From Octopus sinensis (Eukaryota), in NCBI RefSeq assembly GCF_006345805.1, contig NC_043019.1:558001-622000 (forward strand): a DNA stretch of 64,000 nt, given 5' to 3'. The translations under genes were made by a program, and so were the position numbers. Each line of letters begins with the position of its first letter. Position 1 is the stretch's first letter. Shown in pieces: positions 8,737 through 63,878 of this stretch. The notes below the pieces were generated by a model. The model was not told the DNA's origin and did not search any database. It saw nothing but the letters and a program-made list of their open reading frames with translations.

Positions 8737-8836
8737 NNNNNNNNNNNNNNNNNNNNNNNNNNNNNNNNNNNNNNNNNNNNNNNNNNNNNNNNNNNNNNNN
8801 NNNNNNNNNNNNNNNNNNNNNNNNNNNNNNNNNNNN
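8737..8836. other. Assembly gap (100 N)
   Basis: Run of N. Confidence 1.
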
Positions 8837-11254: not shown

Positions 11255-11439
11255 CATTATTACTATTATTATTATTATTATTATTATTATTATGTATAAG
11301 GTAAAGAGTACGTCATTAAATATTATATGTATAAATATATCTATAGATATATGTATATATATATATATGTATATTATATATGTATATATATGTGTATGTA
11401 TATATATATATATATATTATATATATGTGTATATATTAC

Positions 11440-12902
11440 ATATATATAAGAAAATAGTAAAGAGTGAAAAAACGACAGAAGGCTTAAATGTTAAAAAATA
11501 TATATATTTGTGTCAAAATGTCTGGAGAATATTGGAAAAAATTTTTTCCTTTTCCTTAAAATGACATAATTTAAAAATTTTTAAAGAAATTACCGGTTTC
11601 GCGTGTAGCTTTTCAAATTTCTTGTGACGTTATGTTTATATTGCATAGAGTTATCGTTGTGTTTATTTTCAGGAGATTTCTAAATAAGGGGAGGTAGTGA
11701 GTGATTTCTTCCGGTGTAAGGGAGATAATCGCTTAAAAATTTTTTTTCCTTTCCCTTGTTAATTTCTCTGTGTCAGTATGTTCGGATGGTTGAGTCTGGG
11801 TTTGTACTTTTCAATGAAGAATGTTTCCTTGTTCAGTCTCATTTGTGTTGATGATCCGAAAGCACATTGGTAAAATGGGAAGATTAAAAATTGTGGCAGT
11901 AGTTGCTTTGCGCATTTCTCAATGCCTCACTAAAAGGTATCATTCTATATTCTGGGAATGCAAATCGTTGTCGATGCAGTGTGCATCTACGCTGAGTGAT
12001 AGTCCCGTGGAACCCACGTAGTCTTGGTGGCAGCCCGAGCATTTAATGACATAAATTATGTTTCAGAGGCACAAGTAAAGTTAGATTTGATCTGAATTTT
12101 TGTCCCTCTTAAAGAGGAATTCTGATCCTTCTAGTAGGTTAGGGCATGTTGCACAGTTCGATCTACCACATTTTTTACTTTTGCATCCGTATTTTAGAAG
12201 ACAATTTTGCCTTTGTGAGAATCTTTTTAAGTGATTTAGGCTGTTTGTAGCTTTTAATGATTTGGTGTAGGTTTAGAATTTCCTTAATTTTGGGTTTTTA
12301 TGAAGTATTGGTAAATTCTGGGTGATGATGGTGAAGGCTTCTTTGTTTCTGGGGTTGTATGTAGATATGTAAGGTAGTATTTTCGGGGAAGGTGTGTGTT
12401 GTGTTGAACTTTTCTTAAAGTTTCTATGTTGATTTCTGGTGCACGTCTGATCCCATCCTATATGAGTTGAGCTGGGTAATGTCTGTCAATTAGGGTGTTT
12501 TTGAGTTCTTGCAATCTAAAGTTCCTGGTATTTTGTTCTGACACTATTGTGCATATCCTTCTTGCAAGGTTGAGGGGATGTTTGTTTTAGTGTGTCTTGG
12601 GTGGCATGAATTAAAAAGAAGGTATGTTTGGCGTCTTGGCTTTGTAAAAAATGTCTGTTTCTCTTTAAGGTTAATTTTTTAATAGTATATCAAGAACGGG
12701 AGCTCCTTTTGGTTGTATTCCATTGTGAACTGTATATTTGGGTTTATGCTGTTCAATAGGTTTTTATTTTAGGAGTTTATCTATGTTTTCATTCCAGAGA
12801 ATGAAACATCGTCTAGGGATCGTTTCCAATTCTCTTTTATGTATTGAGAGAGGGAGTTTCCAAAGATTGATATGGCTATCGATATGTTAAGGAAGGGTTT
12901 CA
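11440..12902 (-). mobile_element. Inverted copy of the 3' end of the Neptune-type PLE
   Basis: Reverse complement of about 16956-15527, then jumps to about 15190-15157. Confidence 0.95.
11584..11623 (-). ncRNA. Minimal hammerhead, U3-A8 core, in the inverted pLTR
   Basis: Exact reverse complement of 16778-16817. Confidence 0.75.
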
Positions 12903-13037
12903 ATATTCAATATTCTCCAGACATTTTGACACAAATATATATATTTTTAACATTTAAGCCTTCTGTCGTTTTTTCACTCTTTACTATTTTCTTATATATT
13001 CCCCCGTGCTTTACCAAACAAAACTGTATTATTATAT

Positions 13038-16000
13038 TAAAACACGTGAGAACGAAAATGCCACAGAAATCAAAACACCTCGGACAAATCTTAAATGAGG
13101 ACATACACAAAGAACTGAATATATTAATTCACAGCTTCTTAACCTGAACAACAAAATCGAGGAATCAAACTTACTCGCCCGGGAAAGTAAAAGCAATGAA
13201 GATGCAACCACTACACTGACCAGGTGAGTAAGGATCTACAAACTGTTATATAAACACTGAACTCAATTTTCATCAACAAATCCGAAAATAATACACAGGC
13301 ACCTAATGAAACACAGCAGGACACCATACGCACCCAAACCAACCCAACAAAAAGAAAAATAGGAAACGTTTGGAATACAAACCTGCACAACAGAAAACTC
13401 ACCTTCTGGAACACATGATAAAAAATTCCAACAAAGCAGATATCTACGAGGGATGGATAAACTCAACACCAATTATCCTCCCACGCAAATTCCAGATAAA
13501 ATTAATTCCTAACGAGCCTGACGGACAGAGATCTATTAGAGAAAAGTCAGCTCTGTTCAATTTAAATCAGAAATAGAGCTTCTAAGACTCAGGGCCTCCA
13601 CAAATGAAGAAAAAATAAAAGCATAGACGAGGAGATGCACAATCTATACTAAAATATACCGAGGGACAACCCCTCGATAATACATTGGATCATTGGAAGG
13701 ATTCATGTGAGAGAGAGAGAGAAATTCCCTCCTACGCTGGGAGAAAAACATGGACTTCTTCCAAAAATATAGTGAAACCTTCAAAAATGAATTGGGTACA
13801 AATAATCCCTTCCTTAAGAAAATTACAATAAATAAAAAAGAAAAACCTAACAACCCACGAACAACCCCCAACTATCCTCCATACACTAAAAACAGAAATC
13901 ACCCACAACCAACCTTTACAAACCACGCTAGACCTAACAAGGAACTAGCTGACAGAGGACGCGTCTATGAAAGAAATTACACCAAAAACAGAACAAACCA
14001 ACAACATCCTAATACCAGACCCAACCACCATACAGCACAATACGACACTAGGATAAGAAATACACCACACACAAATCGCTACTACCCCATGAACAAAACT
14101 ACTGGTCCCCACTAAACACAAGACAAACGCAAAGAAACACTATGTCAAGCAACATCCCACATACAAGAAGTTCGAAACAAAAATATTCCCATACAAAAAT
14201 TTTACACACACCACAAGCAATAACAACCATAGATTCCCACACACACACAAACGATCGGAGGCAACAATACCACCACTCCCCGACCAAATACCACACAACC
14301 TCACAGAAAAATCATACAAACAAAATTACACCCAACATTTTTTAGCCAGGGACCAGGGACACCAGGACACAGGCTGGAACCTAGTAATAAGGAAAAACCG
14401 AAGATAATCAATTTTTCAACCAAACTCTTTCTAACATAAAAATTGACATCCTCGCAAAAGGGCTCAAATTTACACCAACTCCACGCAGAGCAAACCTAAA
14501 TGAACTCAAGGATAATATAACAGAATTTTGCAGAAAATTAAGACTAGCAGAAGCATCAAACAATTTCAATACTGAAGATGAATCACTAGTCAAGAAACAA
14601 AAGTGAACACATCCCACACAGAGGAAGAAATAAAATCTTGACGAATTCTGTAACCACATGAGAACTTCCCCTACCATATATACATAAACAGAAAGCTAAC
14701 CCAAATTTTAACACTACACATGGAAAGAACTGATAGAACTCCAAAATGATGAAGATATAAACCATTAAGGAAGCGGACAAGGGAAATGCAGTTGTAATAA
14801 TGGATACATCATACTACAGAAATCTTGTAATTTCCTTGCTTGATGAAAGACCTACATTATGAAAAAATTACAACTACACCCCACAAAAAATGATGAAAAC
14901 TCTATCTTCACTAATTAAAACCCATGAAAAGGAACTGACAACCAAAGAGATTGATTTCCTAACAAACTTTAAATGCAAAACCTAGCCTTTTCTATGGTCT
15001 GCCAAAAATTCATAAAAGTCAAATTATAAATGAAACCATTAAAAAATCACCAAAGACATACATACAACACCTAATCCGGGGGACCTAAAACTACGACCAT
15101 TGTAGCTGGCCCAACTGTGAAACAACACAGACTAAGTCTACTTATGGACATCCTCCTGAAACCCTTCCTTAAACATATCGATAGCCATATCAGAGATGAC
15201 TTAGATATGTTAAACCACCTTCCAAAAAAACCAAGGAAGAAACTATCCTGGTTTCATTTTGATGTAGTCAACTTGTATACCAGTATACCTCATAATTATG
15301 GACTGGAGGCAATACAGTTCTGGTTAGACCAATTTCCGGAAGAAATACCAAAAGGATCAGTAAGGGATTCATTACTAAATCATTGAATTCATCCTACACA
15401 ATAACCACTTCATGTTTGATAATACATTTTACCGTCAAAAATCCGGATTGCTATGGTACAAGGGCAGCACCCGTCATTGCGAATTAACAATGGGATACAT
15501 GGAAATAATCATTACCAGGAATCTCTATCAATCTTTGGAAACTCCCTCTCTCAATACATAAAAGAGAATGGAAACGATTCCTAGACGATTGTTCATTCTC
15601 TGGAATGAAAACATAGATAAACTCCTAAAATTTAAAAACCTATTGAACAGCATAAACCCAAATATACAGTTCATAATGGAATACAACCAAAAGGAGCTCC
15701 CGTTCGTGGATATACTAATTAAAAAATTAACCTTAAAATAGAAACAGACATTTTTACAAAGCCACAGACGCCAAACAATACCTTCTTTTTAATTCATGCC
15801 ACCAAGACACACTAAAACAAACATCCCCTTCAACCTTGCAAGAAGGATATGCACAATAGTGTCAGAACCAAATACCAGGAACTTTAGATTGCAAGAACTC
15901 AAAAACACCCTAATTGACAGACATACCCAGCTCAACTCATAGAGGATGGGATCAGACGTGCAACAGAAATCAACATAGAAACTTAAGAAAAGTTCAAAAC

Positions 16001-16620
16001 AACAACACACCTTCCCCGAAAATACTACCTTACATATCTACATAAACCCCAGAAACAAAGAAGCCTTCACCATCATCACCCAGAATTTACCAATACTCAT
16101 AAAAACCCAAATTAAAGGAAATTCTAAACATACACCAAATCATTAAAAGCTACAAAACAGCCTAAATCACTTAAAAAGATTCTCACAAAGGCAAAATTGT
16201 CTTCTAAAATTACGGATGCAAAGTAAAAAATGTGTGGTAGATCGAACTGTGCAACATGCCCTAACCTACTAGAAGGATCAGAATTCCTTTAAAGAGGGAC
16301 AAAAATTCAAGATCAAATCTAACTTTACTTGTGCCTCTGAAAACATAATTTATGTCATTAATGCTCGGGCTGCCACCAAGACTACGTGGGTTCCACGGGA
16401 CTATCACTCAGCGTAGATGCACACTGCATCGACAACAGATTGCATTCCCCAGAATATAGAATGATACCTTTTAGTGAGCACATTGAGAAATGCGCAAAGC
16501 AACTACTGCACAATTTTTAATCTTCCCATTTTACCAATGTGCTTTCGGATCATCAACACAAATGAGACTGAACAAGGAAACATTCTTCATTGAAAAGTAC
16601 AAACCCAGACTCAACCATCC
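13038..16620 (+). pseudogene. Frameshifted PLE RT plus GIY-YIG endonuclease ORF
   Basis: IKEADKGNAVVIMD, FYGLPKIHK, FDVVNLYTSIP, WKRFLDDC, CGRSNCATC linker, IIYVI..YVG; many 1-nt indels. Confidence 0.92.
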
Positions 16621-16777
16621 GAACATACTGACACAGAGAAATTAACAAGGAAAGGAAAAAAAAATTTTAAGCGATTATCTCCCTTACACCGGAAGAAATC
16701 ACTCACTACCTCCCCTTATTTAGAAATCTCTGAAAATAAACACAACGATACTCTATGCAATATAAACATAACGTCAC

Positions 16778-16817
16778 AAGAAATTTGAAAAGCTACACGC
16801 GAAACCGGTAATTTCTT
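16778..16817 (+). ncRNA. Minimal type-I hammerhead with compensatory U3-A8 core
   Basis: AAGAAAT-TTGAAAA-GC(TACAC)GC-GAAA-CCGG-TA-ATTTCTT: 7-bp stem I, palindromic ACCGGT, GUA site, sense to the ORF. Confidence 0.78.
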
Positions 16818-17015
16818 TAAAAATTTTAAAATTATGTCATTTTAAGGAAAGGAAAAATTTTTCCAATATTCTCCAGACATTTTGACACAAATATATATAT
16901 TTTTAACATTTAAGCCTTCTGTCGTTTTTTCACTCTTTACTATTTTCTTATATATTCACCACGTGCTTTACCAAACAAACTTTCTTATCTATACATATAT
17001 ATATATATTATATAT

Positions 17016-17046
<31 letters not shown>

Positions 17047-17152
17047 CCATATATATACATACATACATATATAATTTCTGTGTGGATGCATCTGTATGAT
17101 ATATAAACAGAAAAAAAAATGTGTATCTATGTGTGCTTTTGTATACCTATAC

Positions 17153-18950: not shown

Positions 18951-19607
18951 AGGCGTAGGAGTGGCTGTGTGGTAAGTAGCTTGCTTACGAACCACGTGGT
19001 TCCGGGTTCAGTCCCACTACGTGGCACCTTGGGAAAGTGTCTTCTGCTATAGCCTCGGACTGACCAAAGCCTTGTGAGTGGATTTTGTAGACGGAAACTG
19101 AAAGAAGCCCGTCGTATATATGTATATATATATATATTAAGGTAAGTAGAAAAATACAACATGGACAAGAACGTATAACTCTTAGAAGACGATACAATAA
19201 ACATGGACAGGACATTCGAACCCCTCAGTCTTCAGTCAAGAACCGGATCATCGTAGTAATTTCGGCTGATTAATCTTGAGATTACTAGATCACGGCCAGC
19301 CCTCCAAGAAAAACTAAGCTGGAAGCGTAGATTTCCTGGAAGAAGGATCGAATGCATACGAACACCAGGACAGCAAAAGGGACAGATATAAAAAAACAAA
19401 AAACAGTGTGTGTGTATGTGTGTGTGTTTGTCCCCCCAACATTGCTTGACAACCGATGCTGGTGTGTTTACGTCGCCGTAACTTAGCGGTTCGGCAAAAT
19501 AGACCGATAGAATAAGAATAAGTCCCAGGGTCGAGTTGCTCGACTAAAGGCGGTGCTCCAGCATAGCCACAGTCAAATGTTTGAAACAAGTAAAAGAGTA
19601 AAAGAGT
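18951..19607 (+). mobile_element. SINE family A interrupted in its TA tract
   Basis: Head half 18951-19137 and tail half 19406-19607. Confidence 0.9.
19138..19405 (-). mobile_element. TA-targeting element family P3
   Basis: Reverse complement aligns with 57120-57370 and 60636-60735. Confidence 0.75.
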
Positions 19608-19619
19608 ATCAGATAACAC

Positions 19620-20870
19620 GTCTTCCAAGGCGCTCATTCTGTTATGAACTACATATTTTATTCCTACACTTATCCCTTTTGGTGTCATAATTTGCTGTTC
19701 AGACATGTTCTCTGGTACATCTGACGAACATTCAGGATATCTTGATATTAAATGTTCATCTTCCCTGTATTAGCTATCATCAATCATTAATTTTCCAATC
19801 AGAGTATATCTCACAAAACTTAAAAAGGATTCCATTCAGCAACACTGGCTGTCATTTCACAAGCCGGATACATTTGCGTTCTATAAGCTTCTCCATCAAG
19901 AAACCGAAAGCCTTAAAACTCTCTGACATTAATTTGACATTTGTATTATAATTTCTGTCACGAATTGTTGTTTTCTGTGGTATTCGCTCTCAACTAACCT
20001 CTGAAGTTGTTGTCACTGATGTCCGTGATGTTCCTGCTTCTTATGTTCTTTTCATTGTAATTGTTGTCATTGTTTTTGCTGCTGCTTAACCCTATCATCA
20101 TCATCATTGTTCGACCGTGGTCGAGATTTTCATAGTCTTTTCAAATGGCTAATAATGTGTGCGCGCGCCGCTACTACACACATTGGAAAGCATTGTACAG
20201 CCAAGCACTAAAGAAGGTCTTTCCTCCTCCATGAAACAAAGCTGTTCCCGCTGGACGTCAACCCAGTATTTCTAAGCTACGGACCGAGTGATTTATTGAA
20301 AGGTTATCTCCCTAGATAGATTGCCTTCACTACGGCTAAGGAGCCCTTTCTACCCACGCAACAAAACACAACCGCACACACATACACGCAACAAATCATC
20401 ATCATCATCATTGTTCGACCGTGGTCGAGACTTTCATAGTCATTTCAAATGGCTAATAATGTGTGCGCGCGCCGCTACTACACACATTGGAAAGCATTGT
20501 ACAACCAAGCACTAAAGAAGATCTTTCCTCCTCCATGAAACAAAGCTGTTCCCGCTGGACGTCAACCCAGTATTTCTAAGCTACGGACCGAGTGATTTAT
20601 TGTAAGGTTATCTCCCTAGATAGATTGCCTTCACTACGGCTAAGGAGCCCTTTCTACCCTAAGTCTTTCCTGATCGGGTAGATGTATAATAAACAGTACA
20701 ACAACCCTATTTCGAATTTGTTAGGCTTATCTATCATCGAATCTGCGGTTTTCTGTAAGAAGTTAGACATCTTTAGAATGAATTTTGTAGATGACTGCCT
20801 CAACGCTTATTATCATGTCATTAATTTACTGCGCTCACAAGACACAGAATTACAGATTTTCTTTTTCCTA
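19620..20870 (-). pseudogene. Exon-like island interrupted by an RTE-derived dimer
   Basis: TTTTTTAG acceptor at about 20868; removing the insert at ACCCTA gives ..HLPDQERLRVKQQQKQ*QQLQ*KEHKKQEHH.. Confidence 0.4.
20094..20659 (-). mobile_element. Dimer of a ~260 bp non-autonomous RTE-dependent element
   Basis: Two near-identical units about 302 bp apart; (GAT)n tail and TCGACC-AC-GGTCGA hairpin shared with the RTE at 26497; 6-bp TSD ACCCTA. Confidence 0.85.
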
Positions 20871-26496: not shown

Positions 26497-26893
26497 CCAT
26501 CATCATCATTGTTCGACCGTGGTCGAGACAATGGAATTTACTATGTTACGCTAGAGATCACGGTCCATGATAGCATTACGGAGGTCCTGTTGCTGGATGC
26601 CTGTATCCCTGGAGAATACATCAGGGTAAGAGAATGTGTGCCCTCTGGTATCGCGAGCAGATGGCTTCCATAGGAGAAGAGTAGAGATTACCTCGTTTTC
26701 AGCTCTACAACAATGTCCAGCAAACTGGACTCTTCTACCTTTCACAAGAGATGATACAGGTGGTAATTTCCCATATATTTGTACTTTGGTTGGATGACGC
26801 TTCCACGAGAGATTTTGAGCTCTCATAAGGAGGCGACGGTAAGTTCCATCCAACCGCCTCTCAAGCTTCTTTGATAAAGTCCAGGTTTCAGAA

Positions 26894-26924
<31 letters not shown>

Positions 26925-27365
26925 CTTCTTCTTCTTCTTCTTCTTCTCTTCTTACAGCATTCACCCGGGGTGGGTTGAGCTGGCTTCATTCATACTCAAT
27001 GCTGCATCTCTCACAAACGCCGAATAGGCCTGGCGATTTAAGGCTAACGACCGCGTGATCTCCAGCGGCGAACGCCCTAGACCCTCCCCATATCTACGGC
27101 GTTCGCCGTTGGAGATCAAGCGGTCGTTAGCCTTAAATCGCCAGGCCTAGTCAGCGTTTGTGAGAGATGCTGCATTGAGTATGAATGAAGCCAGCTCAAC
27201 CCATCCCAGGTGAATGCTGTAGTAATAATAATAATAATAATAAGAAGAAGAATAAGAAGAAGAATGTTTCTGAGCCATATAGTAGAATTGGTTCGACTCT
27301 GGTTTTGAAGATTTTAAGTTTGAAATCTCTACTTAGATTTGACGACCAGATCTTATGTAGTGATA
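26497..27365 (-). mobile_element. RTE-clade LINE 3' fragment, interrupted
   Basis: LHKIWSSNLSRDFKLKIFKTRVEPILLYGSE|TWTLSKKLERRLDGTYRRLL..FAGHC; (GAT)n tail. Confidence 0.88.
26893..27264. mobile_element. Palindromic insertion with microsatellite ends
   Basis: 129-bp arms 26953-27081 and 27093-27221 (8 mismatches), (CTT)n left, (TAA)n(GAA)n right, 9-bp TSD-like GGTTTCAGA/TGTTTCTGA. Confidence 0.88.
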
Positions 27366-41923: not shown

Positions 41924-42345
41924 TAGGCACAGGTGTGGCTGTGTGGTAAGTAGCTTGCTTACCAACCACATGGTTCCGGGTTCAGTCCCACTGCGTGACA
42001 CCTTGGGCAAGTGTCTTCTACTATAGCCTCGGGCCGACCAATGCCTTGTGAGTGGATTTGGTAGACAGAAACTGAAAGAAGCCCGTCGTATATATGTATA
42101 TATATATATATGTGTGTGTGTCTCTATGTTTGTGTGTCTATGTTTGTCCCCCTAGCATTGCTTGACAACCGATGCTGATGTGTTTATGTCCCCGTCACTT
42201 AGCAGTTCGGCAAAAAGAGACCGATAGAATAAGTACTGGGCTTACAAAGAATAAGTCCCGGAGTCGAGTTGCTCGATTAAAGGTGGTGCTCCACCATGGC
42301 CGCAGTCAAATGACTGAAACAAGTAAAAGAGAAAGAGAAAGAGAG
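41924..42345 (+). mobile_element. SINE family A
   Basis: Full length. Confidence 0.93.
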
Positions 42346-42371
42346 AGATATACTATTTTGCTATTTACTAT

Positions 42372-42584
42372 TTTATTGTTTTGCTATTTTACTTGTTTCA
42401 GTCATTTGACTGTGGCTATGCTGGAGCACCGCCTTTAGTCAAGCGAATCGACCCCAGGACTTATTCTTTGTAAGCCTAGTACTTATTCTATCGGTCGCTT
42501 TTGCCGAACTGCTAATTTACGGTGACGTAAACACACCAGCATCGGTTGTCAAGCGATGTTGGGGGGACAAACACAGACACACAA

Positions 42585-42635
<51 letters not shown>

Positions 42636-42830
42636 CACACACATATATATATGTATATATATATACGACGGGTTTCTTTCAGTTTCCGTCTACCAAATCC
42701 ACTCACAAGGATTTGGTCGACCCGAGGCTATAGTAGAAGACACTTGCCCAAGTTGCCACACAGTGGGACTGAACCTGGAACAATGTGGTTGGTAAAGAAG
42801 CTACTTACCACACAGCCACCCCTACGCCTA
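42372..42830 (-). mobile_element. SINE family A
   Basis: Full length, tail-to-tail with the previous copy. Confidence 0.93.
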
Positions 42831-43051
42831 TATATTATATTTCAAGAACAAAAGCTAAAAATGATAGTTAAACACAAAAGAAGATGATATTTTATACTAC
42901 ACAGTAAGAAAAATCAGATGACACCACATTTGGAATGGTTAACTACCAGTTTTGTCCTGAAAGTAGGACGAAAACTCTTTAGTTAGTGATCATTGCTTCG
43001 TCTTTTAGTATTTCAAAAGCTTACTGTTTACATTATGCTAGAGAGGCAATC

Positions 43052-43495: not shown

Positions 43496-44399
43496 CATAC
43501 TGGATTCGCTCTAAACGACTGGTCCTCTCCCCCAAACTTTCGGGCTTTGTGCCTAGAATAGAAAATATTGTTCTAGACAAACAATGTATCTGACGATTCT
43601 CAGTGAAGACAGGGCTTGATTTATGAGAAAATTTAGCTGTTCAATCTGAGAGATCGAAGAATCGTGTAGTATCTCTTTATAGCAGTCCTCATTTCTTCAC
43701 TACTTCTTTTTAATCAGAAGGGCTTTAGAGCATCTAATCCGTTATATTTTATAAAAACGTTTCATGCTGGTAGTTGCACGCATTTCCTTTCGTTACTTAT
43801 GTTTGCAGCTGATGACATCCTAGTAGATTACATTGTTGTTATGCAAATGTGATATTCAGGGCTTTACAAAATTCTTTCGGACAACTTTCTCTGTTAAAAC
43901 AATCTTTAATTACTTTTCATATCTTAATCGAATTGCAAATATCTAACACAAAAGGAAATCCTATACGAGCGTGTAATTAATTAATAAGTTGGAGGAAACT
44001 GATGATAACAGCATTGTAAATAACTGAAAGTTTCATCTTCTTCAGAACAAATTGATTATACATTTGGAAAAGAATATTTGTGAATCATAAGGAGTTATCC
44101 CTTCGTTTTTCTGCTAAACCAGTGGTTCTCAATCGTGATCCATATGAGCTCTGAGGGTCCATATAAGGTTTTTAGGGTCCACCTAACAAAGTACATTTTC
44201 TGTCTAGAACACTCAACAGTATTTTAAGGGCCCCTGAATATATTTCTCGTTAGATGTATGTATCGGTATGTATAACAAGAAACAGCTACGGTTCTTTATC
44301 TAACATTTTACATAGTTCAACCTATACAAATTATTGTGTGAAAATACGAATTTTGTAAGAAGTTTCTATAAATCTTGTTTATAAACATTGAATGAATAT

Positions 44400-44950
44400 G
44401 CTGTTCCACCTGAATAAAATAGTATTCAATGTGGCTATGCAGCATATAAGCTATTGGGAAAGACTCAAGAGATTAAGACTCTATTCCTTAGAGCGTAGAC
44501 GAGAAAGATACGTCATAATATACATCTGGAAGATCCTGGAAGGACTTGTCCCAAACTTTGGCATCGAGTGTTACACAATACTAGAACTGGACGCCACTGC
44601 ATAGTGCCAAGGACTCCAAATGTAGGACAAGATACTGCGATAGCCTGGGCTTCAGAGGTCCACAGCGTTTCAATATTTTCCCGAAGGACACGAGACACCT
44701 GCATGGGGTGGATGCAGATGTCTTTAAAATAAAGCTGGACCTTTTCCTGTCAGGTGTCTCAGATGAACCAACTTCACGGCAGGATGTACAGATAAGGGCA
44801 GCTGCATCAAATTCTCTCATGCACCAAATGTCAATTGCTAAAAATCATTCATGAAGTAAAATCATGTAGTAACACTGAATGGCGGTGCCCCAGTATGGCC
44901 ACGGCTCGTGAGCTGAAACTAGATAAAAATGAAAATGAAAATAAAAATAG
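44400..44950 (+). mobile_element. CR1-group LINE 3' fragment
   Basis: SYWERLKRLRLYSLERRRERYVIIYIWKILEGLVPN..FKIKLDLFLSGVSDEP; (ATGAAA)n-like tail. Confidence 0.82.
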
Positions 44951-45365
44951 ATAAAAAAAAAGTTCAGAATCGAAACATGAAATATCAAATGAACACTAGA
45001 CGTCATAGACCTGATGCTATTGATCAGCCTGAGACCTGCATTTAATAAAATATTTTTCAGAAAAATACCCTATTGTGTTATGTATGCGATTATGGACAAA
45101 CGTTGATGGGTGCTCTAATACAAGCACCGATGTATGTCCGATATGAAAGGTAGTAACGAAAAGTAAGATGTATCTAAGAGCATGCCTAATTAATTTTGAT
45201 ACAATTTTTTAACATTTGCTCCATATTTCTGTATATATTGAAAGCATAGCTAATTAAATTCCTCCCTGTTATCAAACCCAGCAAAGGTTACTTCAGATGA
45301 AGGTGAAGGTAGCATTCTTCCTTTACTGAAATTATATATTTATGACATTATAAATATATATATAT

Positions 45366-45708
45366 ATAAATTAGAAAAAAACACCTTTCATCAATTCAAA
45401 ATGAACAATTAAATTACACCATCTAGAAAATTATTTTATTGTTCTAGTTTATTTTTAACCTGATGAGTGACTATATTTATATCGAAGTGATTTCACTACT
45501 GCTATAATCATTTCTTAAATATAGCCACGAAACACGTGTCGTTATTATACCAATTATATACGTTTTTATTATTTTTTTGCAATTTACTTAATCATTGACA
45601 TTTTATCGTTATTTTAACTTTAATATTTCTATTATATGTAATTATCTAGATGGTGTAATTTAATTGTTCATTTTGAATTGATAAAAGGTGTTTTTTTTCT
45701 AATTTTAT
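45366..45708 (+). mobile_element. TA-embedded ~345 bp element with ~60 bp inverted termini and a central hammerhead
   Basis: Arms 45368-45427 and 45645-45706; (TA)n on both sides. Confidence 0.9.
45456..45544 (+). ncRNA. Type-I hammerhead ribozyme, canonical core, GUC site
   Basis: TAAC-CTGATGA-GTGACTATATTTA..TAAATATAGCCAC-GAAA-CACGTG-TC-GTTA; 12/13-bp stem II, palindromic ACACGTGT. Confidence 0.88.
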
Positions 45709-45932
45709 ATATATATATTATATTGTGTGAAATTTGATTTAGTATTTCTAAATTGATTTTTTTTCCTTCTAAGTTTGGATTTTATTCCCTCAAATGATAA
45801 CTATTATATATATTACCTTCAATTAGAATATTCTTGTTAAATTCTTACCGTATATTCGTTTGATTAAGTCTGTTTAGTGTTTTGAAATTGTTAGTTCATT
45901 ACTAATTTTTTTAGTAATAAAAGTAATTGCAA

Positions 45933-46090
45933 ACAGGCGCAGGCGTGGCTGCATGGTAAGAATTTTGTTTCACAGCCACATTGTTCTTGCTTCAGTCCAA
46001 TTACGTGGCATATTGTGCAAATGGCTGCTACGAGAGCTCCGGGCAGATAAACGTTTTCCGAGTATGTGCGGCGGACGAAAACGGAAAGAA
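45933..46090 (+). mobile_element. SINE family A head, degenerate
   Basis: GCGCAGGCGTGGCTGCATGGTAAG. Confidence 0.7.
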
Positions 46091-46100
46091 TTGCTGCCGT

Positions 46101-46146
<46 letters not shown>

Positions 46147-46241
46147 CGCACGCACACACACGCGCGCGCATATAAGCTTTAAGTTTATAAGCGTTCACCG
46201 AGCATTGATTAACGTAAATAATTTAATATTAGAGCATTAAG

Positions 46242-52824: not shown

Positions 52825-53420
52825 TATGAATATAATTATAATTAGGGTTCAGCAAAAATTTGCTTCACCACATACCTAAATATAGAAATAGCAGTTAAAA
52901 CTAACTATTTCACTACCATAAGAAAATCTCCCATATGTATATATATATATATATATATATACAAAAATTCAGGGTGAGTACTTGATAATTGTAAGCACCT
53001 GTATATACCGTTTGGTGGTGTAGGTGGTGGAGTAAATTAATCAAAATAAAAACTTGATGCCAAGGATTCAGCGTTACATATGTTTCGGGCCTTTATTAGA
53101 AGGATTTATAGCAATGCATAATGTGTGTCTATGGCATTCTTCAGCCGCGCACAATTACTACTTCAAGGACATGTATTACATCAAAAATTCTACGTTGGGG
53201 ATGCAAATCCTCTCAGTCGCGTACGACATTATGCGGTACCGGCACAAAAATGAAGCGTCCAGCCGGTCTTTCTCTCAATGTAGAATGAGGAAGTTTGGAT
53301 GTTGAGGTAATATAAATATATATATACATATATATATATACATATATATATATATAATAGTAACTATATTAGGAGTATAGCTCCAAAATTCAATTTAGTA
53401 TTAAATCAAATTTCGCAGTA

Positions 53421-62023: not shown

Positions 62024-62334
62024 AATTAAAACTATACACCGCCATTCCAAACAGGATTAACACGTACTATGCAGAGAATATTGTGAACACACACCGTGTG
62101 TATTAATACATTACGCGTTCACAAAGAATTACAACACTAGAAAACGCATACACACACATAGAGCAAAACATACAGAATATTCCCCTATGACATCATCACA
62201 AGCATTAAAAATTGTGGCAAACACCACATTTCGAAATAAAAATATGACGCGTATACAAGAATTCACAAAACGTACATTCAAAATTTGAAGCAATTATAAA
62301 TATATAGCTGTAAACATTTATGTATATTTTATGC

Positions 62335-62770
62335 ATAGGCGTAGGAGTGGCTGTGTGGTAAGTAGCTTGCTTACCAACCAAATGGTTCCGGGTTCAGTCC
62401 TACTGCGTGGCACCTTGGGCAAGTGTCTTCTACTATAGCCTCGGGTCGACCAGAGCCTTGTGAGTGGATTTGGTAGACGGAAAATGAAAGAAGCCCGTCG
62501 TATGTATATATATATATATCTATATATATCTATATATGTGTGTGTGTGTTGTGTGCGTGTGTGTGTTTGTGTGTGTGTGTTTCCCCTCACCCAACATCGC
62601 TTGACAACAGATGCTGGAGTGTTTGCGTCCCCGTTATCTAGCGGTTCGACAAAAGGGAACGATAGAATAAGTACTAGGCTTACAAAGAATGAAGTCCTGG
62701 GGTCGATTTGCTCGACTAAAGGCGGTGCTCCAGCATGGCCGCAGTCAAATAACTTGAAACAAGTAAAAGA
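62335..62770 (+). mobile_element. SINE family A
   Basis: Full length. Confidence 0.92.
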
Positions 62771-63878
62771 GCATACATTCATTTTCTACTCTATCTTTCC
62801 CGTGCTTCCAGTGTTGTTCTGTTCTTTATTTGTCTCTTTTCAATGCGGTCATTCCAAAATAACGTGAAATTTCGATTTACAGATTTTTTTCTTCATCGCA
62901 ATTTGTTTTTTAAAATTTTTTCTATTTTTTATTTTTTCTTCAAATGAATTGTTTATGTCCGAAAGGTTACAGCATTTTCATTTCTAACTCTCTGGAGAAA
63001 GAATAAATTTTAAAACTTTCAAGGGGTTCTCATTGCGTGTGTATTATGATATTATGCATTAACATACACAAACACAAATACATACATACACACACAATCA
63101 CGGACGCACCCACACAAACACACGCACCCATAAAACAGAATATATGTATATATATATATATAATTATATTATATATATATATATATATTATATTATTGTA
63201 TATTCTGCGACGACTCTGATTACTAGCTGTCGAATTTACAATTCTGTAATATAATATAATATTTTTTCTAACCATTTATATATATATATATATATATTAT
63301 ATATATTTAATTTGAGTACATATGGTATCTGTGTGTCTGTGCGCGTACGTGGTGTGTGTGTTTTTGTGTTTGAATTATTCCAGTCGACAACTACTGAGAA
63401 CTCGGTTTACTTGACGAACGAAATGTTTATTTATGATTGGGCAACGCACTTATTCATACGCAACCCACACATCTGAATATAAATATTTCTCTTTTAGATC
63501 ATTATATATATTTGAGGTTAACCAGTTTGATATCTCGTCAAACTAAACACATGATATTCTGTTGTTACTGTTCTGTTCCGGGTCAGAATTGGTAGAAATG
63601 AAGCAGATTTAACCCATCCGTCATTTTACCACGTATAATATACTTATTACATTTTCCTTTATCTTTCTTGATGAGGGTGAAATTTACAATGCATCCCAGC
63701 ATGTAGAATTCACAGTTTATTTGGGGTTTTAATATGGATGTCAAATATATAAAATATCTCTAGATCTACAGTACTAGAGCACAGAATATTGTAGAGGAGT
63801 CACCGACTATATATCTGTCCGGTAGCGATTGGATATTTTCGCGTAAAGTTTGTTCCACCCCAACTGTGAATCATTTAC

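What the first reader, a model, noticed from the sequence alone, without database searches (positions are those of the whole stretch)
45366..45708. MITE-shaped 345 bp element carrying a canonical hammerhead ribozyme
Seen: ~60 bp inverted termini in (TA)n enclose TAAC-CTGATGA-[12/13 bp stem II]-GAAA-CACGTG-TC-GTTA. This is a type-I hammerhead with an unaltered core, a GUC site at 45540 and a palindromic stem III. Established: PLE pseudo-LTRs encode minimal type-I hammerheads that cleave as dimers (Cervera and de la Pena 2014; Lunse et al. 2017), and PLE insertions often carry an inverted copy of their 3' end. Inference: this is a non-coding PLE parasite whose TIRs come from that inversion. It would be annotated as a DNA MITE but move via RNA.
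Basis: partly seen in the sequence, partly recalled or inferred. Interest (0 to 1): 0.88.

Follow-up and report, generated by a model that had tools for sequence, protein, structure and literature searches.

The report
Truncated Penelope retroelement carrying a hammerhead ribozyme
The 380-bp inverted-repeat element really does carry a complete hammerhead ribozyme motif, but it is most likely the ordinary footprint of a truncated Penelope-like retrotransposon insertion in an octopus-type genome, a known kind of thing rather than a new class of mobile element.

Summary
Two inverted arms (45345-45436 and 45636-45726; the 67-nt non-TA part differs at 3 positions) enclose a type-I hammerhead at 45456-45544. 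Every core nucleotide is canonical. Helix I has 4 bp, helix II has 12 of 13 pairs plus a 9-bp extension, and helix III is the palindrome ACACGUGU. The cleavage site follows C45540.

It is not a chance motif. A Penelope-type hammerhead signature gives 10 hits in 136 kb of this window plus related loci, against 0.18 expected. All 9 hits with enough downstream sequence have a (TA)n run 63-185 nt after the cleavage site. The candidate's distance is 165 nt.

The same window holds a near-full-length Penelope-like element (PLE, 11330-17073). It has the same layout: an inverted 5'-truncated twin, (TA)n on both sides, and a mini-hammerhead in its 3' UTR. Two further octopod PLE loci share this layout.

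Best reading: a 5'-truncated PLE 3' end of about 290 nt plus an inverted, shorter twin, both inserted into (TA)n. The inverted arms are therefore a by-product of retrotransposition.

Single hammerheads from truncated PLEs were already described in 2014. Novelty is low: a new member of a known kind.

The parts
45345..45436 (-). Left arm. It is read as an inverted, more severely 5'-truncated copy of the element's 3' end. The outer ~25 nt is (TA)-rich, with (TA)7 at 45355-45368.
   Evidence: 91-93% match to the reverse complement of the right arm; 3 differences in the 67-nt non-TA part
45437..45726 (+). Forward unit of about 290 nt and 21% GC, with no ORF of 30 aa or more. It is read as the 5'-truncated 3'-terminal (pLTR / 3'-UTR) piece of a PLE. 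Its last 67-90 nt form the right arm.
   Evidence: tblastn with PLE proteins finds no coding remnant here.
45456..45544 (+). Type-I hammerhead ribozyme motif. Helix I is 45456-45459 / 45541-45544. C3-A9 (CUGAUGA) is 45460-45466. Helix II is 45467-45528 (62 nt). G12-A14 (GAA) is 45529-45531. The helix III palindrome ACACGUGU is 45532-45539. C17 is 45540.
45540..45541 (+). Predicted self-cleavage site, between C17 (45540) and G1.1 (45541).
   Evidence: Position follows from the core numbering. Cleavage itself is not tested.
45636..45726 (+). Right arm, the 3' end of the forward unit. It ends in ...GGTGTTTTTTTTCTAATTT followed by (TA)6 at 45706-45717.
11330..17073 (+). Comparator in the same window: a frameshifted, near-full-length EN+ PLE. 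The RT + GIY-YIG ORF remnant is at 14424-16615. An inverted 5'-truncated twin lies at 11330-12872. A 155-nt direct pLTR piece lies at 12884-13036. A one-sided tail of about 40 nt lies at 16956-16995. (TA)n runs flank both outer ends.
16778..16817 (+). 40-nt mini-hammerhead in the 3' UTR of that PLE: AAGAAAU UUGAAAA GCUACACGC GAA ACCGGU A | AUUUCUU. Its core has U3-A8 in place of C3-G8. The twin copy is at 11584-11623 on the - strand.
   Evidence: The same motif occurs in a 96%-identical copy, L005.

Best explanation
The element is the product of one Penelope-like-element (PLE) retrotransposition into a (TA)n microsatellite. It consists of a forward, heavily 5'-truncated copy of the PLE's non-coding 3' end (45437-45726), joined head-to-head to an inverted and even shorter copy of the same 3' end (45345-45436). 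The forward copy carries the ribozyme that PLEs keep in their terminal repeats.

Inferred mechanism:
1. The GIY-YIG endonuclease opens the (TA)n target.
2. (TA)n is self-complementary, so the 3'-OH of either DNA strand can pair with the U-rich, (UA)n-ending 3' end of the PLE RNA.
3. Both strands prime reverse transcription, both cDNAs stop early, and the two are joined.
4. The result looks like a MITE, but its arms are two copies of one 3' end, not transposase-binding terminal inverted repeats.

The hammerhead is a PLE-type minimal ribozyme. Helix I has 4 bp and no loop-loop contacts can be assigned. Helix III is the 8-nt palindrome ACACGUGU. By analogy with other PLE hammerheads it would need a second copy, pairing through that palindrome, to cleave after C45540. 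As a lone copy with no evident promoter it is probably inert.

What is shown: the anatomy, the motif, and the match to PLE comparators. What is inferred: the integration mechanism, the need for a dimer, and the present inactivity.
For: 1. The core and helices are complete.

2. A PLE-hammerhead signature was scanned over the window plus L003-L007. It required GAAA, then a 6-10-nt palindrome running from A15.1 to U16.1, then H17, with a C3-G8 or U3-A8 core within 110 nt upstream and a helix I of at least 3 bp. It gave 10 hits in 136 kb against 0.18 expected. Five of the nine other hits (w16801, w11600, L003, L005, L007:13643) lie 0.1-1.4 kb downstream of a PLE RT/GIY-YIG reading frame that tblastn maps on the same strand.

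3. All 9 hits with enough downstream sequence have (TA)>=5 starting 63-185 nt after the cleavage site, and the candidate's distance is 165 nt. Only 15.3% of positions have this property. Two more PLE contigs give 138 and 100 nt.

4. L004:16093-16147 (Octopus sinensis) has the same sub-architecture: a 4-bp helix I, CUGAUGA, 3 bp then an A.C mismatch then a long helix II, the 8-nt palindrome ACAGCUGU, and (TA)n 82 nt downstream.

5. The layout of an inverted 5'-truncated twin next to a forward copy, with both outer ends in (TA)n, occurs in the window's own PLE (arms 94.4% identical), in L006 (98%) and in L007 (97.8%). The element's arms are about 95% identical.

6. The literature describes exactly these traits. 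PLEs insert into (TA)n and carry an inverted 5'-truncated copy at the 5' side (PMC8557442). PLE hammerheads have a short helix I, a large helix II and a palindromic helix III. Most occur singly as truncated PLEs, and some occur as pairs on opposite strands 100-700 bp apart (PMC4209133).
Against: No sequence similarity was found between the element and the 3' ends of any of the 8 PLE families sampled, so no parent is identified.

No second copy was found, so the test of 'variable 5' end, fixed 3' end' could not be run.

The 30-40-nt one-sided tail seen in the window PLE and in L007 is not evident here.

The unpaired nucleotide between A9 and 10.1 that is common in PLE hammerheads is absent.

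Helix II is 62 nt, against 9-28 nt in the comparators.

The hammerhead-consistent monomer fold is 3.6 kcal/mol above the minimum-free-energy fold.

Rfam models give no hit, although they also miss the control hammerheads.
Confidence: 0.68

Rival explanations
1. One reading: a dedicated non-autonomous, non-coding family (a retrozyme-like or SINE-like parasite of PLEs). It would be copied repeatedly by PLE reverse transcriptase, and its MITE shape would be a regular feature of the family.
For: The unit size (about 290 nt), low GC (21%) and type-I hammerhead fit metazoan non-LTR retrozymes (PMC7229834). Those are now argued to be PLE derivatives, and solo monomers are known (bioRxiv 10.64898/2026.07.22.740005). 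No coding PLE with this 3' end was found among 8 families. The expanded helix II sets the element apart from the autonomous PLEs sampled.
Against: There is only one hammerhead and no tandem repeat. No second copy turned up in the window, in about 90 kb of octopod loci, or through a pseudo-protein search of its reading frames. The sample is far too small to exclude a family. A one-off 5'-truncated PLE copy explains everything with fewer assumptions.
Confidence: 0.2
2. A true class-II MITE, moved by a DDE transposase through its terminal inverted repeats. It would have picked up a hammerhead-bearing PLE fragment, or evolved the motif internally.
For: The inverted arms are long and well matched. 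The TA-rich flanks are compatible with the TA target-site duplication of Tc1/mariner-type MITEs.
Against: No clear target-site duplication is visible. The only direct repeat is a 7-nt TGAAATT offset by 11 nt on one side, read, and it is not significant. No related terminal repeat or transposase occurs in the window. The distance from hammerhead to (TA)n matches PLE 3' ends. The same inverted layout arises from PLE insertion without any transposase.
Confidence: 0.07
3. A chance hammerhead-like motif inside a local inverted duplication of AT-rich DNA.
For: The expected frequency of such a motif is about 5e-5 per 64 kb, so one or two could arise by chance in a genome of a few Gb (the genome size is my assumption). 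RNAfold z for 45440-45560 is only -1.1. There is no Rfam hit.
Against: The signature is enriched more than 50-fold in octopod loci. The candidate shares the positional rule relative to (TA)n with every bona fide PLE hammerhead examined, and it shares fine structure with L004:16093.
Confidence: 0.05

Closest known systems
Minimal type-I hammerheads in the pseudo-LTRs of Penelope-like elements (Cervera and de la Pena 2014, PMC4209133; Lunse et al. 2017, not readable here)
   Same: The core is canonical, including G10.1-C11.1. Helix I is short (4 bp) and helix II is enlarged. Positions 15.2-16.2 and loop 3 are palindromic, which implies action as a dimer. The motif occurs singly in a non-coding fragment near a (TA)n run. 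These features were read and compared.
   Different: Helix II is much longer: 62 nt in a two-part stem, against 7-8 bp reported and 9-28 nt in my comparators. There is no unpaired nucleotide between A9 and 10.1. No homologous coding PLE has been identified.
PLE insertion architecture: an inverted 5'-truncated copy next to the forward copy, with a microsatellite target (Craig et al. 2021, PMC8557442)
   Same: The inverted copy lies on the 5' side of the forward copy. The outer ends are 3' ends that abut (TA)n. The same layout appears in the window PLE, L006 and L007.
   Different: The structure is miniature: arms of 67-90 nt around 205 nt, against arms of 0.9-1.5 kb around a copy of several kb. 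There is no ORF, no visible 30-40-nt tail, and no direct pLTR piece.
Metazoan non-LTR retrozymes (Cervera and de la Pena 2020, PMC7229834; Li et al. 2026 preprint)
   Same: A non-coding, AT-rich unit of about 170-400 nt with a type-I hammerhead whose helix III is 2 bp plus a palindromic tetraloop. Descent from PLE terminal repeats is proposed.
   Different: The element is not tandem and has a single hammerhead, so no unit-length RNA or circular RNA can be released. The inverted arm is not a retrozyme feature.
MITEs (non-autonomous DNA transposons)
   Same: Small, non-coding and AT-rich, with long terminal inverted repeats. It would be called a MITE by structure-based tools.
   Different: No target-site duplication, no family and no cognate transposase were found. 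The arms are better explained as duplicated 3' ends of a retroelement.

Membership tests
Hammerhead ribozyme, type I | Conserved core: C3 U4 G5 A6 N7 G8 A9, G12 A13 A14, the A15.1-U16.1 pair, and H17 | tested here: met
   CUGAUGA at 45460-45466, GAA at 45529-45531, A15.1 at 45532, U16.1 at 45539, C17 at 45540
Hammerhead ribozyme, type I | Three helices around the core, with helix I open (5' and 3' ends in helix I) | tested here: met
   Helix I: 4 bp, UAAC/GUUA. Helix II: 12 of 13 pairs plus a 9-bp extension, predicted by RNAfold. Helix III: 2 bp plus the tetraloop ACGU, or an 8-nt intermolecular palindrome.
Hammerhead ribozyme, type I | Scores at or above the gathering threshold of the Rfam hammerhead covariance models | tested here: inconclusive
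   No hit, even at E<=10. The same models also miss the hammerheads in the window PLE's 3' UTR and in O. sinensis L004.
Hammerhead ribozyme, type I | Self-cleavage at the predicted site | not testable with these tools
   Needs in vitro transcription of monomer and dimer constructs
PLE-type minimal hammerhead | Short helix I (4-5 bp), enlarged helix II, G10.1-C11.1, palindromic 15.2-16.2 / loop 3 | tested here: met
   for the candidate. Criteria are from PMC4209133.
PLE-type minimal hammerhead | Unpaired nucleotide between A9 and 10.1 | tested here: not met
   G10.1 follows A9 directly and pairs with C11.1
PLE-type minimal hammerhead | Lies in the terminal repeat or 3' end of a PLE, or of a truncated PLE | tested here: inconclusive
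   The distance to the downstream (TA)n (165 nt) falls in the 63-185 nt range of all 9 evaluable hits. No sequence homology to any sampled PLE 3' end.
Penelope-like element (autonomous, EN+) | ORF with reverse transcriptase and a GIY-YIG endonuclease | tested here: not met
   tblastn with PLE proteins finds such coding sequence only at 11789-12864 and 14424-16615, and none near 45 kb. The longest ORF in the element is 24 aa.
PLE-derived insertion (truncated) | Inverted 5'-truncated copy abutting the forward copy, with a microsatellite target | tested here: met
   Arms. (TA)7 and (TA)6 at the outer ends. Same layout in 3 of the 4 main PLE loci examined (window PLE, L006, L007; not L004).
PLE-derived insertion (truncated) | 3' end homologous to that of a coding PLE in the same genome | tested here: not met
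   No similarity to the window PLE or to L003-L010. The genome itself could not be searched.
Non-LTR retrozyme | Tandem repeats of 170-400 bp, each with a hammerhead | tested here: not met
   One hammerhead, and no direct repeat of the unit
MITE (class II) | Terminal inverted repeats | tested here: met
MITE (class II) | Target-site duplication of fixed length | tested here: inconclusive
   The flanks are (TA)n, which would hide a TA duplication. Otherwise there is only an offset 7-nt TGAAATT repeat.
MITE (class II) | Multi-copy family with both ends fixed, and a cognate transposase sharing the terminal repeats | not testable with these tools
   No eukaryotic genome database was available. No copy was found in the window or in about 90 kb of octopod loci.

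The most novel reading that the evidence does not exclude
The element is one member of an unrecognised family of MITE-shaped, hammerhead-bearing non-autonomous retroelements in cephalopods. The family would be propagated by PLE machinery. Its expanded 62-nt helix II and long inverted arms would be functional, for example by stabilising the RNA or feeding small-RNA pathways. Structure-based annotation would systematically misfile such elements as DNA transposons.
Probability: 0.12. Interest if true: 0.55.

Novelty: new member of a known kind. Interest (0 to 1): 0.27.

Why it matters
The main value is for annotation. Short inverted-repeat structures in (TA)n-rich invertebrate genomes can be footprints of Penelope-like retrotransposition rather than DNA MITEs. 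A hammerhead motif about 60-190 nt upstream of the (TA)n is a practical marker for that origin.

The case also shows that Rfam's hammerhead models miss this whole class. In cephalopod genomes these motifs have to be found with descriptors.

If a family were found, it would extend the retrozyme/PLE-parasite picture to cephalopods. The picture itself is already in the literature.

Tried and rejected
1. Rfam cmscan on the window, the element, the PLE 3' UTR and L004. It found no hammerhead anywhere, including in the control hammerheads, so I dropped it as a test.

2. A search for a second copy.
- blastn of the element against the window gave only (TA)n hits.
- Exact-pattern scans of metagenome and viral contigs with arm and helix II strings gave three chance matches, L001 and L002, unrelated outside the seed.
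- A protein search with the concatenated stop-free frames of the element found nothing.
- An exact look-up of a neighbouring ORF was not on record.

3. Pfam on single PLE ORF fragments gave no hits. The PLE identity came instead from the concatenated query, which matched ~750-aa proteins carrying RVT_1, GIY-YIG and HTH_animal, and from tblastn.

4. Alignment of the element to the window PLE's 3' end gave only AT-rich noise. A 31-nt, 84% match to both arms of the Argonauta PLE (L007; E = 0.007-0.008) lies in AT-rich sequence, and I treated it as chance.

5. Weak descriptor hits at 43590 and 43999 (helix II of 3 pairs) are at the chance level.

6. I considered a covariance model built on the comparator hammerheads and did not build it. 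The 62-nt helix II would be scored as a long insertion, so the result would be uninformative.

Full report
**What is there**

In hammerhead numbering:
- Helix I is 45456-45459 paired with 45541-45544.
- C3-A9 is 45460-45466.
- Helix II is 45467-45528.
- G12-A14 is 45529-45531.
- A15.1 to U16.1 is the 8-nt palindrome ACACGUGU at 45532-45539.
- C17 is 45540.

Helix II has 12 of 13 pairs, with an A.C mismatch at 10.4/11.4. RNAfold extends it with a second 9-bp stem inside the supposed loop.

The inverted repeat is also real. The repeat finder gives arms of 81 nt at 91%. blastn extends them to 45345-45433 / 45639-45726. The non-low-complexity 67 nt differ at only three positions. The outer part of each arm is (TA)n, so the exact termini cannot be fixed from one copy.

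**Is it more than chance?**

A descriptor scan finds this as the only complete hammerhead in the window. Simulated windows suggest about 5e-5 such motifs per 64 kb. That is convincing for one window. For a genome of a few Gb (my assumption for size) it would still allow one or two chance hits. The Rfam models give nothing. I therefore looked for independent evidence.

**A Penelope-like element in the same window**

Six-frame inspection turned up Penelope-like-element (PLE) protein motifs. A concatenated conceptual translation matches proteins of about 750 aa that carry RVT_1, GIY-YIG and HTH_animal. These include proteins annotated in Octopus sinensis and Argonauta hians. tblastn maps a frameshifted but near-full-length copy at 14424-16615 (+), and an inverted 5'-truncated copy at 11789-12864 (-).

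Self-blast gives the full layout:
- An inverted twin at 11330-12872, matching 15526-17073 at 94.4%.
- A 155-nt direct piece of the 3' end at 12884-13036.
- The main copy after that.

(TA)n lies at both outer ends, and one side carries an extra tail of about 40 nt. This is the architecture described for PLEs by Craig et al. 2021 (PMC8557442).

The 3' UTR of this PLE holds a 40-nt mini-hammerhead at 16778-16817, with its twin at 11584-11623. Its core is UUGAAAA, that is U3-A8 in place of C3-G8, and its helix III palindrome is ACCGGU. The U3-A8 covariation in PLE hammerheads was reported in 2014 (PMC4209133).

**Comparators from elsewhere**

Through the PLE proteins I fetched three groups of loci:
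- Two O. sinensis loci (L004, L006) and one Argonauta locus (L007).
- A 96%-identical copy of the window PLE from a Logan assembly (L005).
- Four PLE contigs, three from ENA metagenome assemblies (L003, L008, L009) and one from Logan (L010).

The window's SINEs match L004 at 85-94%, so the window comes from an octopod genome.

I scanned the window plus L003-L007 with a PLE-hammerhead signature. It required GAAA, a palindromic helix III, H17, a C3-G8 or U3-A8 core within 110 nt, and a helix I of at least 3 bp. It gave 10 hits in 136 kb, against 0.18 expected.

Every one of the 9 hits with enough downstream sequence has a (TA)>=5 run 63-185 nt after the cleavage site. The candidate's distance is 165 nt. 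Only 15.3% of positions have this property. L008 and L009 add two more cases at 138 and 100 nt, with an A3-U8 core.

The O. sinensis motif at L004:16093-16147 shares the candidate's fine structure. It has a 4-bp helix I, CUGAUGA, three pairs then an A.C mismatch then a long stem, the 8-nt palindrome ACAGCUGU, and (TA)n 82 nt downstream.

Rfam misses these control hammerheads too, so its silence on the candidate means nothing.

The inverted-twin layout recurs in L006 (arms 98% identical) and L007 (97.8%).

**Interpretation**

The hammerhead is a genuine PLE-type motif. The simplest account of the MITE shape is a PLE integration event in (TA)n that left a 5'-truncated forward copy of about 290 nt and a shorter inverted twin. 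The literature already states that most PLE hammerheads occur singly in truncated PLEs, and that some occur as pairs on opposite strands. It also states that most PLE insertions are 5'-truncated.

The proposed mechanism is that both strands of the self-complementary (TA)n target prime on the (UA)n-ending RNA. This is my inference.

The ribozyme's palindromic helix III and 4-bp helix I suggest dimer-dependent, weak activity, as measured for other PLE hammerheads. The monomer hammerhead fold lies 3.6 kcal/mol above the minimum-free-energy fold.

**What remains open**

I found no second copy and no coding PLE with a related 3' end. No searchable eukaryotic genome database was available. A true DNA MITE gets about 0.07 and chance about 0.05.

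The one unusual trait is the 62-nt helix II, against 9-28 nt in the comparators.

**Verdict**

This is a new member of a known kind, of modest interest.

Noticed in passing
window 11330-17073: A near-full-length but frameshifted EN+ Penelope-like element. It has a C-x4-C-x4-C-x2-C linker before the GIY-YIG domain, which looks Neptune-like (clade assigned from memory of the literature, not tested). It also has an inverted 5'-truncated twin, a 155-nt direct pLTR piece, a one-sided tail of about 40 nt, and (TA)n on both sides.
   Followed up: yes
window 16778-16817 (+) and 11584-11623 (-); L005 1132-1171: A 40-nt mini-hammerhead in the PLE 3' UTR with a U3-A8 core (UUGAAAA) and the palindrome ACCGGU. 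Across the PLE contigs sampled, the 3-8 pair appears as C-G, U-A and also A-U (AUGAAUA in L008 at 2674 and L009 at 2866). This is natural covariation of the tertiary 3-8 pair. U3-A8 is published. I could not check whether A3-U8 is.
   Followed up: partly
window 52968-53314 (- strand): A 347-nt insert between two (TA)n runs (53315-53356 and 52938-52967). It contains a degenerate hammerhead-like string, CUGAAGA...GAAA-CAUAUG-UA, about 110 nt upstream of the 3' (TA)n. Helices I and II are poor. It could be a decayed truncated PLE end or chance (about 0.5 such loose matches are expected per window). It has no similarity to anything else sampled.
   Followed up: partly
L004 16093-16147 (Octopus sinensis CM016868.1): A solitary canonical-core hammerhead with the same sub-architecture as the candidate. 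It lies 82 nt upstream of a (TA)n run, in non-coding sequence, with no inverted partner.
   Followed up: partly
window and L004, all hammerhead sites: The Rfam 15 hammerhead covariance models detect none of the PLE-type hammerheads tested, even at E<=10 on stretches of a few hundred bases.
   Followed up: yes
window, e.g. 45935-46160, 62318-62867, 42172-42887, 19314-19706: Many copies of a SINE, recalled from memory as the tRNA-derived octopus SINE (its type was not tested here). The copies are often followed by microsatellites and match O. sinensis L004:17750-18140 at 85-94%. More than 120 (TA)>=5 runs occur in 64 kb.
   Followed up: partly
window 44392-44604 (+); 26551-26964 (-): LINE-like ORF fragments. 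The first carries a CR1-type C-terminal motif, YWERLKRLRLYSLERRRERY, about 750 nt upstream of the element. The second has an RTE-type C-terminus. Both were identified from memory of such motifs only, and Pfam gave no supporting hit.
   Followed up: no
window 8737-8836: A run of 100 N, which is an assembly gap.
   Followed up: no
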